A stretch of 64,000 nucleotides of DNA, taken from the NCBI RefSeq assembly GCF_947568905.1, contig NC_079169.1:2604001-2668000 (forward strand), given 5' to 3'. A program made the position numbers and the translations under genes. This DNA is from Ostrea edulis. Lineage: Eukaryota. Positions within the stretch are counted from its first letter, which is position 1, and each line of letters starts with the position of its first letter. Of this stretch, positions 3,101-59,945 are shown piece by piece. The notes beneath the pieces are model-generated. The model made no database searches and was not told the origin of the DNA. It saw only the letters and a list, made by a program, of their open reading frames with translations.

Positions 3101-3416
3101 CCACTGATTGATCATGATGAAGATGAATATACATGTTTGCATCTTATTATCACAACAGCTATTTCACTTCTTTATCCATGACTACTGGTACATGCATTGT
3201 TGCATGCTTTTGAGAAGTTAAAATAATGCATGTATACAATTTGTACAAAGGAGTTTCAAAGGAAACTATTGGGGTTCGTATCTATAAGAGAGCACGAAAA
3301 CATTTTGTCTATCCATTAAGTTAGACAAAGATAGAATGGAGACTATAATCAAAAGTAAATTAAATATGCATGACGTATTTCATAAAATGAAATGTACAAG
3401 GTCCTGCTAATCAGCA

Positions 3417-51339: not shown

Positions 51340-52638
51340 TCACCATTCACTGGGCACACACTTGTTAACACTGAGTGTTTTCCTCTTGCTGATCCCTAAT
51401 GAGCGTCTGCTTCTGTTCCTCTTGTTGGAGAACCATTTCTTCACCTGCTCCTCCTTGATTCCTCCTCTCACGGCTAGATTCTGGATGACATCAGATGGTG
51501 GGTGCGGGTGATCGAGATGACTGTAGTACCACTGCTCCATAAGCTGAACGGCCTTCTGGGATAGGGATGGTCTGGTCCGTAGGTTGTTCTGGCTGCAGGT
51601 CTGGTGCTGTGCTGTGGTGGTCATGTTGATGGTTGATGACTGCTGAGGTAGATTGTCCTCCAGGAACTGTAGACTGCTCTCCACTCGGTCCATGATGCGA
51701 TGATGGATGATGGTATAGTGTTGGTTGATGCTCTCTTGGATGTGGTGGGGCTGTCTGGAGTTCTGGTGAAGCGCACAGTAGCGATCAGTCTCCACTTGGG
51801 CACTCTGGTACTTAAAGAAGGATGTCAGGTCATTCATCTGCTGAGGATGGAAGGGACGAAGGCTGTCAAGTCTCTGCAGAAGCTGTCGTTCACGGCTGGC
51901 AGTGGACATCTCGGGTTGAATGGACTTGATGAGCACAGATGGAGTGTATGAACTGGCCTCTGAGCGGAAGATGGACTGAAGAGCACTGAAGATTTCGTTG
52001 GATGAGATGATGTTGTCACTGAAGTTTTTCTGTGGTATTGGAGGTGGTAGACACTTGAGAGCAAGCTGAAGTTCGTTGTCTGGAGATTTCTCTGGTGTGG
52101 GTTGGTCGCTGATGAGGGAAGCCAAGAACTCATCAAATCTGGTCTCTGCTTTGCTGGTATCAATGTCATTCTGGCTGGAAGATGAGATGTTGTTCTCTGA
52201 AAATTTCTCTGGTGTGGGTTGGTCGCTGATGAGAGAAGTCAGGCACTCATCAAATCTGGTCTCTGCTTTGCTGGTGTCGATGTCATTGTGGCTGGAGGAT
52301 GAGATGTTGTCTGGAGATTTCTCTGTTGTGGGTTGGTTGCTGATGAGGGAAGTCAGGCACTTGTCAAATCTGGTCTCTGCTTTGCTGGTGTCAATGTCAT
52401 TCTGGCTGGAGGATGAGATGTTGTCTGGAGAATTCTCTGGTGTGGGTTGGTTGCTGATGAGGGAAGTCGGGCACTTATCAAATCTGGTCTTTGCTTTGCT
52501 GGTGTCAATATTCTGGCTGGAGGTGGTGAGAGGCTGGGGTGTGGCTGGGGAATCGTCAAAGATGGTGGCCTTGATGATGTCCTCCAGCGTGGTATTAAAG
52601 TTGATCTCGATGTGGGGTGAAGAAGCACGATCAGCCAT
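51340..52638 (-). CDS. Divergent TALE-class homeobox transcription factor, copy A (spiralian-specific SPILE-like), 432 aa, intronless CDS
   Basis: C-terminal homeodomain RTRPSLSQKAVQLMEQWYYSHLDHPHPPSDVIQNLAVRGGIKEEQVKKWFSNKRNRSRR with the three-residue loop extension and WFxN; upstream helical block QQMNDLTSFFKYQSAQVETDRY...INQHY...IMDRVESSLQFLE; four 38-aa N-terminal repeats. Confidence 0.9.
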   Translation of the reverse strand: MADRASSPHIEINFNTTLEDIIKATIFDDSPATPQPLTTSSQNIDTSKAKTRFDKCPTSLISNQPTPENSPDNISSSSQNDIDTSKAETRFDKCLTSLISNQPTTEKSPDNISSSSHNDIDTSKAETRFDECLTSLISDQPTPEKFSENNISSSSQNDIDTSKAETRFDEFLASLISDQPTPEKSPDNELQLALKCLPPPIPQKNFSDNIISSNEIFSALQSIFRSEASSYTPSVLIKSIQPEMSTASRERQLLQRLDSLRPFHPQQMNDLTSFFKYQSAQVETDRYCALHQNSRQPHHIQESINQHYTIIHHRIMDRVESSLQFLEDNLPQQSSTINMTTTAQHQTCSQNNLRTRPSLSQKAVQLMEQWYYSHLDHPHPPSDVIQNLAVRGGIKEEQVKKWFSNKRNRSRRSLGISKRKTLSVNKCVPSEW

Positions 52639-52926
52639 GATGAATCACGATATACACAACACAAAGCACTAACACCTAAACATACTAAAATACAAAATCA
52701 CTCAACACAACATATACACTATTACTTACAATGTACAGACAATATGACTGCAGGTAAGCAACACAGAAAGAACACAAATTCACAAAAACAAGGAATGAAT
52801 TCAATAGGTGCAAAATGTAGAATTTATTGCTCCAATGAATTAGGCAATCTATAGGATTATATCAGCTCTCTGATACCTCAGACTGGATCACAATATGTGA
52901 ATAGTTGAAATTCAATAGCAAGGGGC

Positions 52927-53540
52927 TTTTTATAGACACAAAGTTCTGCTACAATTCAGCTTGGATTGCAAACAAAGATGTTCATTGGTCATGAGGTGTT
53001 TCCATCAGTTGTGATTGGTTGATGAATCCAATTATTTAACAAGCTAAGTTGGGACTGGCTGGTTTTGCATCATTGACCACACCTTTCCTTGGTCTGAGAA
53101 ATCAGCTTGGGGTCATTAGGGATAGCTTGGGTGTGGTCACCTTGTGGTGTGGGGATCAAAGTAAGCAGCTGGTTACTAATTGATCATAATTAATACTGGA
53201 GACCTACAGATCAAAGGGAAAGACCGTTCTCTGATTGGTCATAGTTAATACTCTACAGAGGGGATGAAATTAAGTGATAAACAGATCTATAATGGGTCAC
53301 ACTAAATGGTCAATCAAAGTGATAAGCTTGTTGCTGGTAAGCCATTATTTCAAACACAATATGTAACAGATCAAAGTGAGAAGATGATCTAATTAGTGCA
53401 CAGATCAAAGTGAGAAGATGATCTAATTAATGCACAGATCAAAGTGAGAAGATGGTCTAATTAGTGCACAGATCAAAGTGAGAAGATGGTCTAATAAGTG
53501 CACAGATCAAAGTGAAAATATATGGTCTTTGACTAATCCT
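52927..53540 (-). promoter_or_regulatory. TATA + multi-CCAAT promoter and TCF/LEF-site array of homeobox copy A
   Basis: Minus-strand TATAAAAA at 52934-52927; CCAAT boxes at 52984, 53014, 53028, 53234; ATCAAAG at 53155, 53210, 53313 and in 34-bp repeats (AGATCAAAG at 53368, 53402, 53436, 53470, 53504). Confidence 0.65.
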
Positions 53541-53754
53541 AATTAGTGCACAAGGACTACCAGATCAAATTGCAAAGCTGGTACTAGTGTGATAAGCCTA
53601 TACATAAGCCAAAACAGAATAGATAAAAAAAACAACAATTAGTTTACTTTCAAAACTTTATAAAAATATAATATACTAAAAGAATTTAATATGATATTTT
53701 AAACATTTCTCCTAATTTATTGTTTATCAATAGTAAATCAGGTTATATTTTTAT

Positions 53755-54808
53755 TGAGAATTGTGTACTGATAGTACTGTGAGAATTGTGTACTGATGGT
53801 ACTGTGAGAATTGTGTACTGATAGTACTGTGAGAATTGTGTACTGATAGTACTGTGAGAATTGTGTACTGATGGTACTGTGAGAATTGTGTACTGATAGT
53901 ACTGTGAGAATTGTGTACTGATGGTACTGTGAGAATTGTGTACTGATGGTACAGTGAGAATTGTGTACTGATGGTACTGTGAGAATTGTGTACTAATGGT
54001 ACTGTGAGAATTGTGTACTAATGGTACAGTGAGAATTGTGTACTGATGGTACAGTGAGAATTGTGTACTGATGGTACTGTGAGAATTGTGTACTAATGGT
54101 ACAGTGAGAATTGTGTACTGATAGTACTGTGAGAATTGTGTACTGATGGTACAGTGAGAATTGTGTAATGATGGTACTGTGAGAATTGTGTACTGATGGT
54201 ACTGTGAGAATTGTGTACTGATGGTACTGTGAGAATTGTGTACTGATAGTACTGTGAGAATTGTGTACTGATGGTACTGTGAGAATTGTGTACTGATGGT
54301 ACTGTGAGAATTGTGTACTGATGGTACTGTGAGAATTGTGTACTGATGGTACTGTGAGAATTGTGTACTGATAGTACTGTGAGAATTGTGTACTGATAGT
54401 ACTGTGTACTGATAGTACTGTGAGAATTGTGTACTGATGGTACTGTGAGAATTGTGTACTGATGGTACTGTGAGAATTGTGTAATGATGGTACTGTGAGA
54501 ATTGTGTACTGATGGTACTGTGAGAATTGTGTACTGATAGTACTGTGAGAATTGTGTACTGATGGTACTGTGAGAATTGTGTACTGATGGTACTGTGAGA
54601 ATTGTGTACTGATGGTACTGTGAGAATTGTGTACTGATGGTACTGTGAGAATTGTGTACTGATAGTACTGTGAGAATTATGTACTGATAGTACTGTGAGA
54701 ATTCTGTACTGAGAGTACTGTGAGAATTGTGTACTGATAGTACTGTGAGAATTGTGTACTGATGGTACTGTGAGAATTGTGTAATGATAGTACTGTGAGA
54801 ATTGTGAG
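53755..54808. repeat. 25-bp satellite x~42 (copy B: 59365-59945, x~23)
   Basis: Unit GTACTGTGAGAATTGTGTACTGAT(G/A); stop-free on the minus strand, producing the spurious 367-aa ORF. Confidence 0.97.
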
Positions 54809-56867: not shown

Positions 56868-58280
56868 TCACCATTCACTGGGCACACACTTGTTAACACT
56901 GAGTGTTTTCCTCTTGCTGATCCCTAATGAGCGTCTGCTTCTGTTCCTCTTGTTGGAGAACCATTTCTTCACCTGCTCCTCCTTGATTCCTCCTCTCACG
57001 GCTAGATTCTGGATGACATCAGATGGTGGGTGCGGGTGATCGAGATGACTGTAGTACCACTGCTCCATAAGCTGAACGGCCTTCTGGGATAGCGATGGTC
57101 TGGTGCGTAGGTTGTTCTGGCTGCAGGTCTGGTGCTGTGCTGTGGTGGTCATGTTGATGATTGATGACTGCTGAGGTAGATTGTCCTCCAGGAACTGTAA
57201 ACTGCTCTCCACTCGGTCCATGATGCGATGATGGATGATGGTGTAGTGTTGGTTGATGCTCTCTTGGATGTGGTGGGGCTGGCTGAGGTTCTGGTGAAGG
57301 GCACAGTAGCGATCAGTCTCCACTTGGGCACTCTGGTATTTAAAGAAGGATGTCAGGTCATTCATCTGCTGAGGATGGAAGGGACGAAGGCTGTCAAGTC
57401 TCTGCAGAAGCTGTCGTTCACGGCTGGCAGTGGACATCTCGGGTTGAATGGACTTGATGAGCACAGATGGAGTGTATGAACTGGCCTCTGAGCGGAAGAT
57501 GGACTGAAGAGCACTGAAGATTTCGTTGGATGAGATGATGTTGTCACTGAAGTTTTTCTGTGGTATTGGAGGTGGTAGACACTTGAGAGCAAGCTGAAGT
57601 TCGTTGTCTGGAGATTTCTCTGGTGTGGGTTGGTCGCTGATGAGGGAAGCCAAGAACTCATCAAATCTGGTCTCTGCTTTGCTGGTATCAATGTCATTCT
57701 GGCTGGAAGATGAGATGTTGTTCTCTGAAAATTTCTCTGGTGTGGGTTGGTCGCTGATGAGAGAAGTCAGGCACTTGTCAAATCTGGTCTCTGCTTTGCT
57801 GGTGTCGATGTCATTGTGGCTGGAGGATGAGATGTTGTCTGGAGATTTCTCTGGTGTGGGTTGGTCGCTGATGAGGGAAGTCAGGCACTTGTCAAATCTG
57901 GTCTCTGCTTTGCTGGTGTCGATGTCATTCTGGCTGGAGGATGAGATGTTGTCTGAAAATTTCTCTGGTGTGGGTTGGTCGCTGATGAGAGAAGTCAGGC
58001 ACTCATCAAATCTGGTCTCTGCTTTGCTGGTGTCGATGTCATTGTAGCTGGAGGATGAGATGTTGTCTGGAGAATTCTCTGGTGTGGGTTGGTTGCTGAT
58101 GAGGGAAGTCGGGCACTTATCAAATCTGGTCTTTGCTTTGCTGGTGTCAATATTCTGGCTGGAGGTGGTGAGAGGCTGGGGTGTGGCTGGGGAATCGTCA
58201 AAGATGGTGGCCTTGATGATGTCCTCCAGCGTGGTATTAAAGTTGATCTCGATGTGGGGTGAAGAAGCACGATCAGCCAT
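56868..58280 (-). CDS. Divergent TALE-class homeobox transcription factor, copy B, 470 aa, intronless CDS
   Basis: Homeodomain protein sequence identical to copy A; five 38-aa repeats rather than four; NSR/NLS and T/I differences in the middle region. Confidence 0.9.
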   Translation of the reverse strand: MADRASSPHIEINFNTTLEDIIKATIFDDSPATPQPLTTSSQNIDTSKAKTRFDKCPTSLISNQPTPENSPDNISSSSYNDIDTSKAETRFDECLTSLISDQPTPEKFSDNISSSSQNDIDTSKAETRFDKCLTSLISDQPTPEKSPDNISSSSHNDIDTSKAETRFDKCLTSLISDQPTPEKFSENNISSSSQNDIDTSKAETRFDEFLASLISDQPTPEKSPDNELQLALKCLPPPIPQKNFSDNIISSNEIFSALQSIFRSEASSYTPSVLIKSIQPEMSTASRERQLLQRLDSLRPFHPQQMNDLTSFFKYQSAQVETDRYCALHQNLSQPHHIQESINQHYTIIHHRIMDRVESSLQFLEDNLPQQSSIINMTTTAQHQTCSQNNLRTRPSLSQKAVQLMEQWYYSHLDHPHPPSDVIQNLAVRGGIKEEQVKKWFSNKRNRSRRSLGISKRKTLSVNKCVPSEW

Positions 58281-58568
58281 GATGAATCACGATATACACA
58301 ACACAAAGCACTAACACCTAAACACACTAAATCACAAAATCACTCAACACAACATATACACTATTACTTACAATGTACAGACAATATGACTGCAGGTAAG
58401 CAACACAGAAAGAACACAAATTCACAAAAACAAAGAATGAATTCAATAGGTGTAAAATGTAGAATTTATTGCTCCAATGAATTAGGCAATCTATAGGATT
58501 ATATCAGCTCTCTGATACCTCAGACTGGATCACAATATGTGAATAGTTGAAATTCAATAGCAAGGGGC

Positions 58569-59135
58569 TTTTTATAGACACAAAGTTCTGCTACAATTCA
58601 GCTTGGATTGCAAACAAAGATGTTCATTGGTCATGAGGTGTTTCCATCAGTTGTGATTGGTTGATGAATCCAATTATTTAACAAGCTAAGTTGGGACTGG
58701 CTGGTTTTGCATCATTGACCACACCTTTCCTTGGTCTGAGAAATCAGCTTGGGGTTATTAGGGATAGCTTGGGTGTGGTCACCTTGTGGTGTGGGTATCA
58801 AAGTAAGCAGCTGGTTACTAATTGATCATAATTAATACTGGAGACCTACAGATCAAAGGGAAAGACCGTTCTCTGATTGGTCATAGTTAATACTCTACAG
58901 AGGGGATGAAATTAAGTGATAAACAGATCTATAATGGGTCACACTAAATGGCCAATCAAAGTGATAAGCTTGTTGCTGGTAAGCCTTTATTTCAAACACA
59001 ATATGTAACAGATCAAAGTGAGAAGATGATCTAATTAGTGCTCAGATCAAAGTGAGAAGATGATCTAATTAATGCACAGATCAAAGTGAGAAGATGGTCT
59101 AATAAGTGCACAGATCAAAGTGAGAATATATGGTC
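58569..59135 (-). promoter_or_regulatory. TATA + multi-CCAAT promoter and TCF/LEF-site array of homeobox copy B
   Basis: TATAAAAA at 58576-58569; AGATCAAAGGG at 58850; 34-bp repeat with AGATCAAAG at 59010, 59044, 59078, 59112. Confidence 0.65.
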
Positions 59136-59364
59136 TTTGACTAATCCTACTTAGTGCACAAGGAGTACCAGATCAAATTGCAAAGTTGGTACTAGTGTGA
59201 TAAGCCTATACATAAGCCAAAACAGAATAGATAAAAAAAAAAACAACAATTAGTTTACATTCAAAACTTTATAAAAATATAATATACTAAAAGAATCTAA
59301 CATGATATTTTAAACATTTCTCCTAATTTATTGTTTATCAATAGTAAATCAGGTTATATTTTTA

Positions 59365-59945
59365 TTGAGAATTGTGTACTGATAGTACTGTGAGAATTGT
59401 GTTTGTGTACTGATGGTACTGTGAGAATTGTGTACTGATAGTACTGTGAGAATTGTGTACTGATAGTACTGTGAGAATTGTGTACTAATGGTACTGTGAG
59501 AATTGTGTACTGATGGCACTGTGAGAATTGTGTACTGATGGCACTGTGAGAATTGTGTACTGATAGTACAGTACTGTGAGAATTGTGTACTGATAGTACT
59601 GTGAGAATTGTGTACTGATAGTACTGTGAGAATTGTGTACTGGTGGTACTGTGAGAATTGTGTACTGATAGTACTGTGAGAATTGTGTACTGATAGTACT
59701 GTGAGAATTGTGTAGTGATAGTACTGTGAGAATTGTGTACTGATAGTACTGTGAGAATTGTGTACTGATAGTACTGTGAGAATTGTGTACTGATGGTACT
59801 GTGAGAATTGTGTACTGATAGTACTGTGAGAATTGTGTACTGATAGTACTATGAGAATTGTGTACTGATAGTACTGTGAGAATTGTGTAGTGATGGTACT
59901 GTGAGAATTGTGTAGTGATGGTATTGTGAGAATTGTATAGTGAGT
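59365..59945. repeat. 25-bp satellite, copy B; end of the duplicated unit
   Basis: Same unit as 53755-54808, decaying into unique sequence at ~59945. Confidence 0.95.

What the first reader, a model, noticed from the sequence alone, without database searches (positions are those of the whole stretch)
52927..53570. A natural TOPflash-like TCF/LEF site array upstream of a spiralian-type TALE homeobox gene
Seen: upstream of the TATA box (52934-52927) of homeobox copy A are eight ATCAAAG sites in ~360 bp. One is a perfect AGATCAAAGGG (53208) and five are AGATCAAAG in a 34-bp tandem repeat (53368, 53402, 53436, 53470, 53504), most paired with a TAAT core (CTAATTAGTG). AACAAAG at 52971 and several GATAA(G) motifs are also present. 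Established: AGATCAAAGG/CCTTTGATC is the TCF/LEF consensus multimerised in the TOPflash Wnt reporter; spiralian-specific TALE (SPILE) genes act in early cleavage; beta-catenin is asymmetric along the animal-vegetal axis in many embryos. Inference: a minisatellite has built a dose-tunable beta-catenin/TCF enhancer that could restrict this gene to particular blastomeres. Caveat: AGATCAAAG also occurs singly inside HINE repeats here (46253, 60749), so a transposon origin or coincidence is possible.
Basis: partly seen in the sequence, partly recalled or inferred. Interest (0 to 1): 0.82.

Follow-up and report, generated by a model that had tools for sequence, protein, structure and literature searches.

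The report
Amplified TCF-like promoter module, oyster SPILE gene
The flat oyster has multiplied a short, anciently conserved promoter module carrying TCF/LEF-type sites in front of an early-embryo TALE homeobox gene, which makes TCF or a related HMG-box factor a testable candidate regulator of these spiralian cell-fate genes.

Summary
Copy A has eight exact ATCAAAG sites in 53155-53512, all on the + strand; dinucleotide shuffles expect about 0.2. Five lie in a 34-bp minisatellite. Copy B, 98% identical, has seven.

The window is Ostrea edulis. The gene is a co-orthologue of CgTALE11-13, which are A/C-clade SPILE genes.

- **Not a transposon.** The 34-bp unit is an internally deleted copy of a ~57-bp promoter module: CTTTGATCTG, then TAATTA, then CACTTTGATC. 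This module is conserved in Saccostrea and Magallana, upstream of CCAAT boxes and a conserved TATA box. O. edulis has three full modules plus the shortened units.
- **Motif enrichment is unbiased.** Across nine bivalve homologue promoters, ATCAAAG ranks 2nd of 3,650 7-mers, after the CCAAT-box word. Pinctada promoters have their own 32-34-bp-spaced ATCAAAGT/TAATTA clusters. Three Mytilus promoters have one site in the same place.

This supports a selected HMG-box input, most likely TCF/LEF. Binding and beta-catenin response are untested, and the oyster promoters lack Helper (C-clamp) motifs. No RNA data were available. Whether the extra units change expression is unknown.

Verdict: a real, conserved candidate cis-regulatory module expanded in one lineage. 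The scan's earlier notes on this window (duplication; 5 versus 4 units) agree.

The parts
51340..52638 (-). Copy A coding sequence: a 432-aa single-ORF TALE homeobox protein (A/C-clade SPILE, co-orthologue of CgTALE11-13)
   Evidence: ORF. Pfam Homeobox_KN scores 34.7 bits against a cut-off of 24. It is 70% identical to P0005, which equals CgTALE13.
52926..52935 (-). TATA box, CTATAAAAAG in gene orientation, 296 nt upstream of the ATG
   Evidence: The box is conserved as CTA(T/C)AAA(A/T)AG in Saccostrea echinata, two S. cucullata paralogues and M. gigas (alignment A2).
52982..53018 (-). Two proximal CCAAT boxes (CCAATGA at 52982-52988, CCAATCA at 53012-53018). A third lies at 53232-53238.
   Evidence: They are invariant in alignment A2. 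CCAATCA is the top-ranked 7-mer across nine homologue promoters.
53148..53226 (-). Module I, the ancestral two-site module: ATCAAAG at 53155-53161 and 53210-53216, with TAATTA at 53187
   Evidence: It aligns with the single module of Saccostrea and Magallana. TTGATCTG is invariant in all sequences.
53306..53384 (-). Module II, a full-length duplicate of the module: ATCAAAG at 53313-53319 and 53370-53376
   Evidence: blastn against the Scuc1 module gives 76% identity over 72 nt, E 1.4e-10. See also alignment A3.
53366..53515 (.). 34-bp minisatellite, 4.4 units. Each unit is an internally deleted module that keeps CACTTTGATCTG and TGCAC-TAATTA.
   Evidence: TRF, pattern search, alignment A3, and spacings of 34, 34, 34, 34.
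53499..53577 (-). Module III, the distal full-length module: ATCAAAG at 53506-53512 and a degenerate ATCAAAT at 53564-53570
   Evidence: blastn against the Scuc1 module gives 74% identity over 65 nt, E 8e-7. See also alignment A3.
56868..58280 (-). Copy B coding sequence (470 aa), part of the 5.4-kb tandem duplicate
   Evidence: The upstream kilobase is 98% identical to copy A.
58568..59185 (-). Copy B promoter: TATA at 58568-58577, CCAAT boxes, and the module series ending at 59185. It has seven ATCAAAG sites, and its 34-bp array (59008-59126) has one unit fewer.

Best explanation
The array is a lineage-specific tandem amplification of an ancestral ~57-bp promoter module. The module has two CTTTGATC (HMG-box, TCF/LEF-type) sites flanking a TAATTA homeodomain site. 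It sits 100-250 bp upstream of a CCAAT/CCAAT/TATA core promoter in the CgTALE11-13 / PfTALEHD1 / MvSPILE-7,-8 subgroup of spiralian TALE (SPILE) genes.

In O. edulis the module was duplicated head to tail. One copy lost its two poorly conserved spacers and became a 34-bp unit, which slippage or unequal exchange then multiplied. This gives 8 exact sites in copy A and 7 in copy B.

The most likely function is a sequence-specific input for an HMG-box factor in cleavage-stage embryos, with a TAATTA-binding homeodomain partner. The single oyster TCF/Pangolin is the best candidate: activating where beta-catenin is nuclear and repressing elsewhere. This input would restrict very early zygotic transcription of the gene to particular blastomeres.

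Shown here: the sites, their non-random number, their local origin and their conservation. Inferred: that they are bound, by which factor, and that more units give more output. My sub-probabilities are about 0.85 for a locally amplified conserved module, 0.7 for a functional cis-regulatory input, and 0.45 for TCF being the factor.
For: 1. Counts far exceed chance, even with the array collapsed.
2. In alignment A2, a block from the module down to the TATA box is conserved among Ostrea, Saccostrea (three paralogues, in different genomic neighbourhoods) and Magallana, while flanking DNA is unalignable. TTGATCTGT of site 53210 is invariant in 5/5. Site 53155 is kept in 3/5 and site 53313 in 3/4.
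3. Alignment A3 and blastn show three full modules in O. edulis. They also show that the 34-bp unit retains exactly the invariant columns. Unit spacings are 55, 57, 34x4 and 58, with no inverted repeats.
4. Unbiased 7-mer ranking puts ATCAAAG 2nd of 3,650 over nine promoters. Words of ATCAAAGTA rank 1-3 in the non-ostreid set.
5. Pinctada L007 has four ATCAAAGT sites 32-34 bp apart with TAATTA between them. L010 has two sites 32 bp apart. Both clusters lie upstream of three CCAAT boxes.
6. Three Mytilus homologue promoters each have one CTTTGAT (at -240, -250 and -251). In the two M. coruscus promoters it lies 60 nt upstream of CCAAT boxes.
7. All eight sites read ATCAAAG and six read GATCAAAG. 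By my own knowledge this is the TCF rather than the Sox flavour of the HMG core.
8. A GCGGCGGC Helper-like motif lies 2 nt from the first Pinctada site, in 28% GC DNA (Helper consensus GCCGCCR from PMC4154663).
9. Related mussel genes are transcribed from the 4-cell stage in D or C+D blastomeres only (PMC8524836). Novel oyster TALE genes are expressed from egg to blastula (PMC5322547).
10. TCF sites working together with homeodomain (CDX) sites is a documented enhancer grammar (PMC8421206).
Against: - There are no binding, accessibility or expression data for O. edulis; no RNA run holds the locus.
- No Helper (GCCGCCR or GCSGS) motif exists in any of the four oyster promoters. Fly and worm C-clamp TCFs depend on such motifs (PMC4154663).
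- The base after CAAAG is mostly T, not the G of the optimal site.
- Two more distant homologues (S. cucullata L008, Mizuhopecten L009) have no site.
- S. echinata keeps only one exact site.
- Copies A and B are so young (98% identical) that their agreement carries no weight.
- Nothing links beta-catenin to the D or C/D quadrant in bivalves in the papers searched.
Confidence: 0.5

Rival explanations
1. The conserved ATCAAAGT word is bound by a different early-embryo factor. Candidates are a maternal Sox-type HMG protein or an unknown activator of the first zygotic genes, acting with NF-Y at the CCAAT boxes. Beta-catenin plays no part. Under this view the module is a 'first-wave zygotic promoter' element, and blastomere restriction comes from elsewhere, for example polar-lobe determinants or unequal RNA polymerase II activity.
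For: - The shared word extends to ATCAAAGT(A/G), which is not the optimal TCF flank.
- Oyster promoters have no Helper motifs.
- The genes are intronless with TATA and multiple CCAAT boxes, as is typical of earliest zygotic genes (own knowledge).
- Zygotic activation in spiralians starts at about the 4-cell stage. In Capitella, RPB1 signal is stronger in C and D blastomeres (PMC12550047).
- WWCAAWG also fits Sox proteins (own knowledge).
Against: - T before CAAAG in all sites is the TCF preference; Sox sites usually read ACAAAG or ACAATG (own knowledge).
- A Helper-like GCGGCGGC is adjacent to one Pinctada site.
Confidence: 0.3
2. Only the ancestral module matters. The extra 34-bp units are neutral minisatellite slippage with no effect on expression, so there is no 'dose tuning'. 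This is compatible with either binding factor.
For: - Unit number already differs (5 versus 4) between two 98%-identical paralogues, showing instability rather than constraint.
- Other genera manage with one to two modules.
- The window is rich in unrelated minisatellites, including a 25-bp satellite right next to the array and a 114-bp repeat inside the ORF.
Against: - The shortened unit kept exactly the three invariant motif blocks and lost only the variable spacers.
- Pinctada independently shows 32-34-bp spaced site arrays.
- Homotypic TCF-site clusters generally raise responsiveness (PMC4154663, PMC8421206).
Confidence: 0.35
3. The 34-bp unit is part of a dispersed transposon-derived repeat, and the sites are coincidental.
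For: Single AGATCAAAG words occur in other repeats of the window (46255, 46421, 60751). Two CTTTGAT sites in Pinctada L010 lie in a duplicated element.
Against: - The unit occurs only at the two paralogous promoters in 64 kb.
- It derives from a neighbouring module that is orthologously conserved in other genera.
- There are no inverted repeats.
- Summed unitig depth over the array is only 2-9 times that of the flanks in four DNA runs. This fits about nine units rather than hundreds of genomic copies, although the tool warns that depth is a poor copy-number measure.
Confidence: 0.03

Closest known systems
Wnt-responsive cis-regulatory modules with clustered TCF sites (TOPflash; fly nkd/Notum W-CRMs; vertebrate Axin2 CREAX, Sp5, c-Myc-335)
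   Same: Several CTTTGAT(C) HMG sites lie within a few hundred bp close to a promoter. Natural WREs typically carry about four TCF sites (PMC8421206). One site here is the exact TOPflash core AGATCAAAGGG.
   Different: Spacing is 34-57 bp rather than about 10 bp. All sites are in one orientation. The oysters have no Helper sites, which invertebrate C-clamp TCFs use (PMC4154663). Binding and Wnt response are untested.
TCF/CDX/CAG enhancer cassette (PMC8421206)
   Same: TCF-type sites alternate with an AT-rich homeodomain site (TAATTA here). Most sites are preceded by CAG (ACAGATCAAAG).
   Different: TAATTA is not the CDX consensus (TTTATG). The partner protein is unknown. The cassette here is a fixed-length repeating unit rather than a loose billboard.
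Promoter minisatellites (VNTRs) that change the number of transcription-factor sites (own knowledge, e.g. MAOA uVNTR, yeast promoter tandem repeats)
   Same: There is a tandem repeat in a promoter, with unit number differing between very recent paralogues (5 versus 4).
   Different: Here the repeat unit can be traced to a module that is itself conserved across bivalve genera. No effect on expression has been measured.
SPILE genes CgTALE11-13, PfTALEHD1/3/10 and MvSPILE-7/-8/-9 (PMC8524836, PMC5322547)
   Same: The downstream gene belongs to this A/C-clade subgroup. Members are expressed in cleavage stages and, in mussel, in D or C+D blastomeres.
   Different: No cis-regulatory analysis of any SPILE gene was found in the searched library. 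Expression of the O. edulis copies is unknown.

Membership tests
TCF/LEF-dependent Wnt-responsive element | HMG-site core CTTTGAT / WWCAAAG, ideally AGATCAAAGG | tested here: met
   There are eight exact ATCAAAG sites, six of them AGATCAAAG and one AGATCAAAGGG.
TCF/LEF-dependent Wnt-responsive element | Several sites clustered beyond chance and evolutionarily retained | tested here: met
   Shuffle tests give 0 of 5000. Sites are conserved in Saccostrea and Magallana. The motif ranks 2nd of 3,650 across nine promoters.
TCF/LEF-dependent Wnt-responsive element | Helper site (GCCGCCR) near HMG sites, as used by C-clamp TCFs of invertebrates | tested here: not met
   Ostrea and the three Saccostrea promoters have zero strict and zero loose (GCSGS) matches. 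One strict match lies next to a Pinctada site. Whether the mollusc TCF needs Helper sites is unknown.
TCF/LEF-dependent Wnt-responsive element | Occupancy by TCF and a transcriptional response to beta-catenin | not testable with these tools
   No RNA or ChIP-type data exist for the locus.
TALE-class, spiralian-specific (SPILE) homeobox gene | 63-residue homeodomain with the three-residue loop extension | tested here: met
   Pfam Homeobox_KN scores 34.7 bits (cut-off 24) and Homeodomain 34.1 bits. The homeodomain aligns residue for residue with the CgTALE13 homeodomain printed in the PMC8524836 supplement.
TALE-class, spiralian-specific (SPILE) homeobox gene | Orthology to a named SPILE gene, with relatives only in Spiralia | tested here: met
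   P0005 (70% identical) has the exact CgTALE13 sequence, an A/C-clade SPILE. All 24 hits that carry a name are bivalve proteins. No tree was built.
TALE-class, spiralian-specific (SPILE) homeobox gene | Expression in early cleavage | not tested
   This is known for oyster and mussel relatives. No RNA run holds the O. edulis locus.
Transposon-derived dispersed repeat | Many dispersed copies, terminal repeats, and no orthologous counterpart at the same site | tested here: not met
   The unit is found only at the two paralogous promoters. No inverted repeats are present. It derives from an orthologously conserved module. Depth is only 2-9 times that of the flanks. The whole genome could not be scanned.

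The most novel reading that the evidence does not exclude
An HMG-box factor, most likely TCF with asymmetric beta-catenin, is the direct upstream switch for D- or C/D-quadrant-specific first-wave zygotic transcription of the CgTALE11-13 / MvSPILE-7,-8 subgroup across pteriomorph bivalves. Turnover in module number (about 1 in Saccostrea echinata, 4-5 sites in Pinctada, 8-10 in Ostrea edulis) tunes the level or threshold of that response.
Probability: 0.3. Interest if true: 0.8.

Novelty: new member of a known kind. Interest (0 to 1): 0.55.

Why it matters
SPILE genes are the best current molecular handle on how spiralian embryos give blastomeres different fates, but what switches them on in particular cells is unknown. 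The mussel authors only speculate about polar-lobe content (PMC8524836). A short module shared by oysters, pearl oysters and mussels, dominated by a TCF-type word next to CCAAT boxes, gives a concrete and cheap experiment: site mutation, GSK3 inhibition, and TCF or Sox binding assays. That experiment could connect maternal asymmetry to the first zygotic fate genes. The O. edulis array also shows how a working cis-module can turn into a minisatellite and multiply its binding sites.

Tried and rejected
- **RNA evidence.** The look-up of sequencing runs returned only DNA-type holders. The transcription start, strand and expression therefore could not be checked.
- **Read laying.** It gave short unitigs that break at the array. 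It yielded no information on unit-number polymorphism. It gave only a rough depth ratio and hints of 90-95% identical paralogous or allelic contigs.
- **Exact-pattern scan of metagenome contigs.** The 34-bp unit found nothing, which is uninformative. The prokaryote, phage and plasmid collections are irrelevant, so the 'genome-wide repeat' test could be done only within the window and by depth.
- **Crassostrea virginica orthologue.** P0003 has no locus on record. The M. gigas contig L004 is truncated inside site 1.
- **Transposon origin.** Rejected.
- **Other readings of the word.** NK-2, T-box, IRF/Blimp and HNF4 were considered by eye and dropped, because only the CTTTGAT core is common to all conserved sites.
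- **Copy B as independent support.** Rejected because it is 98% identical.
- **Earlier scan notes.** Searches by the words TCF and TALE returned only notes on this same window.

Full report
**What is there**

The window is Ostrea edulis chromosome OX387709 at about 2.65 Mb. On the minus strand lies a single-ORF TALE homeobox gene. Copy A is at 51340-52638 (432 aa). A 5.4-kb tandem duplicate carries copy B at 56868-58280 (470 aa). Pfam Homeobox_KN and Homeodomain both score above their cut-offs. The upstream kilobases of the two copies are 98% identical and differ by one 34-bp unit.

- eight ATCAAAG in 53155-53512, all on the + strand;
- AGATCAAAGGG at 53208;
- five AGATCAAAG in a 34-bp repeat (53366-53515, 4.4 units);
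- TAATTA between the units;
- TATAAAAA at 52927-52934 on the minus strand.

Copy B has seven sites.

**Is it more than chance?**

The window holds 30 ATCAAAG against 18.7 expected, and half of them lie in the two promoters. In 52927-53570 dinucleotide shuffles give a mean of 0.23 against 8 observed. With the minisatellite collapsed to one unit the figures are 0.16 against 4. In both cases 0 of 5000 shuffles reach the observed count.

**Which gene**

The best hits are all bivalve proteins. P0005 from Magallana gigas (70% identity) has exactly the sequence printed as CgTALE13 in the supplement of PMC8524836. CgTALE11 and CgTALE12 are near-identical to it. These are A/C-clade SPILE genes. Pinctada P0012 carries the PfTALEHD1 homeodomain.

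Mytilus P0008 resembles MvSPILE-8 by eye, including its distinctive C-terminal tail. It lies in an intron of a PX-kinase-WH2 gene, as does S. cucullata L003. The published CgTALE12 model is fused to a PX kinase.

In the mussel, MvSPILE-7 and -8 are transcribed in the D blastomere from the 4-cell stage, and MvSPILE-9 in C and D. In the Pacific oyster the novel TALE genes 1-4 and 7-14 are expressed from egg to blastula (PMC5322547).

**Comparative evidence**

I fetched homologous loci from:
- S. echinata (L002);
- S. cucullata (L003, L005, L008);
- M. gigas (L004, truncated);
- M. galloprovincialis (L006);
- M. coruscus (L011, a tandem pair);
- Pinctada imbricata (L007, L010);
- Mizuhopecten (L009).

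The upstream kilobase of O. edulis aligns with the Saccostrea and Magallana promoters only in one block. That block runs from the ATCAAAG sites to the TATA box. DNA further upstream and most of the 5' leader are unalignable.

Within the block:
- the TATA box and the CCAAT boxes (AACCAATCA) are conserved;
- TTGATCTGT of the site at 53210 is invariant in all five sequences;
- the site at 53155 is kept in three of five (CTTTCATC in the other two);
- the site at 53313 is kept in three of four.

The oyster paralogues lie in different genomic neighbourhoods: next to a RING/IQ gene, inside a TIR-domain gene, and inside the PX-kinase gene. The promoter block has therefore travelled with the gene and been maintained.

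**Origin of the 34-bp unit**

blastn of the O. edulis upstream region against the other species shows that their single ~57-bp module matches three places in O. edulis. The module reads CTTTGATCTGTTAG, then TATTGTGTAT-TAATTA-T, then CTTATCACTTTGATC. The three places are:
- 53148-53226;
- 53306-53384 (E 1.4e-10 against Scuc1);
- 53499-53577 (E 8e-7).

In alignment A3 two consecutive 34-bp units align to one module with two internal gaps. The first gap removes about ten bases after GATCTG. The second removes about twelve after TAATTA. What is kept is exactly the set of invariant columns.

The repeat finder independently reports ATCAAAG-centred copies spaced 57, 34, 34, 34, 34 and 58 bp. It also reports a 55-bp pair at 53154/53209, and no inverted repeats.

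The region 53148-53577 is therefore a head-to-tail chain of module copies. One shortened copy has become a minisatellite. This removes the transposon caveat:
- the unit occurs nowhere else in the window;
- summed unitig depth over it is only 2-9 times that of the flanks in four DNA runs (a weak measure);
- a whole-genome scan could not be run.

**Unbiased motif test**

For each of nine upstream kilobases, with the O. edulis array collapsed, I scored all 7-mers against an order-1 background and summed the log P values.
- ATCAAAG ranks 2nd of 3,650, behind the CCAAT-box word CCAATCA.
- In the set without any ostreid orthologue, the three top words are overlapping pieces of ATCAAAGTA.
- In the two Pinctada promoters alone the same three words lead.

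Pinctada L007 has ATCAAAGT at -636, -602, -570 and -497, plus a TTCAAAGT, with TAATTA-type motifs between them. All lie upstream of three CCAAT boxes. L010 has two ATCAAAGTAAA sites 32 bp apart upstream of three CCAAT boxes. In Pinctada the sites are on the sense strand, the opposite orientation to the oysters.

Three Mytilus promoters each have one CTTTGAT, at -240, -250 and -251. In the two M. coruscus promoters it lies 60 nt upstream of two CCAAT boxes. Two more distant homologues (L008, L009) have none.

**Which factor?**

The common core is CTTTGAT(C), the HMG site of TCF/LEF. The T before CAAAG distinguishes it from typical Sox sites (own knowledge).

For fly TCF the published HMG consensus is SCTTTGW(W)SWW and the Helper site is GCCGCCR. 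Helper sites near HMG sites are needed for activation (PMC4154663). No Helper-like motif exists in the four oyster promoters. One GCGGCGGC lies 2 nt from the first Pinctada site, in 28% GC DNA. This feature is therefore not met in oysters and only hinted at in Pinctada.

TCF sites cooperating with a homeodomain (CDX) site and a CAG motif is a described grammar (PMC8421206). Here most sites read ACAGATCAAAG and alternate with TAATTA.

No paper in the library links SPILE genes to Wnt, beta-catenin or TCF. Beta-catenin's role in spiralian axial patterning is described as modified and poorly understood (PMC9133022). Zygotic transcription in spiralians can begin at the 4-cell stage (PMC12550047).

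**Conclusion**

The array is a local amplification of a module under long-term constraint in the promoters of this SPILE subgroup.

My estimates are:
- the module is a functional cis-regulatory input: likely, about 0.7;
- the factor is TCF acting with beta-catenin: the best single candidate, about 0.45, but untested and weakened by the missing Helper sites;
- the extra O. edulis units tune dosage: pure inference. They may be neutral slippage, as the 5-versus-4 difference between near-identical paralogues suggests.

The scan's earlier notes on this window (s1-268741, s1-268800) agree with what I measured.

Noticed in passing
window 52075-52523 and 57603-58165: A 114-bp (38-codon) tandem repeat lies inside the SPILE ORF, with 3.9 units in copy A and 4.9 in copy B, which gives the 432-aa and 470-aa products. 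The NCBI model P0001 (325 aa) skips 107 codons here, so either an intron was called inside the repeat or the model is an artefact.
   Followed up: partly
window 53755-54806 and 59366-59943: A 25-bp satellite (TGAGAATTGTGTACTGATGGTACTG; about 42 units in copy A and about 23 in copy B) starts about 180 bp beyond the last promoter module and fills the space up to the next duplicated unit.
   Followed up: no
L003 (S. cucullata), L006 (M. galloprovincialis): The SPILE homologue is nested in an intron of a PX-domain kinase/WH2 gene in both an oyster and a mussel. This matches the fused CgTALE12 gene model in the PMC8524836 supplement. It is conserved nested synteny that identifies an old orthology group.
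   Followed up: partly
window 53131-53152: The conserved promoter block contains two TGTGGT (RUNX-type, RACCRCA) words. Further towards the gene it contains a conserved CCCAAGCTGAT word (CCAAGCT ranks 3rd in the nine-promoter 7-mer test). The factors are unknown.
   Followed up: no
L007 3357-3364 (Pinctada imbricata): GCGGCGGC, which fits the Helper/C-clamp consensus GCCGCCR, lies 2 nt from the first ATCAAAG in otherwise 28% GC DNA. It is the only Helper-like motif next to a site in any promoter examined.
   Followed up: partly
L010 about 3253-3275 and 3379-3400 (Pinctada imbricata): Two further CTTTGAT words sit in a duplicated GGGTAGGGCTTTGATAT element that looks like a dispersed repeat. They are not part of the promoter module and show that single sites can ride on repeats.
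   Followed up: no
window 52755-53126, read sets X1 and X19: Public DNA runs contain unitigs 90-95% identical to the promoter. They also contain a variant that leaves the reference after 53164. This suggests further diverged paralogues or alleles of this promoter in O. edulis.
   Followed up: no
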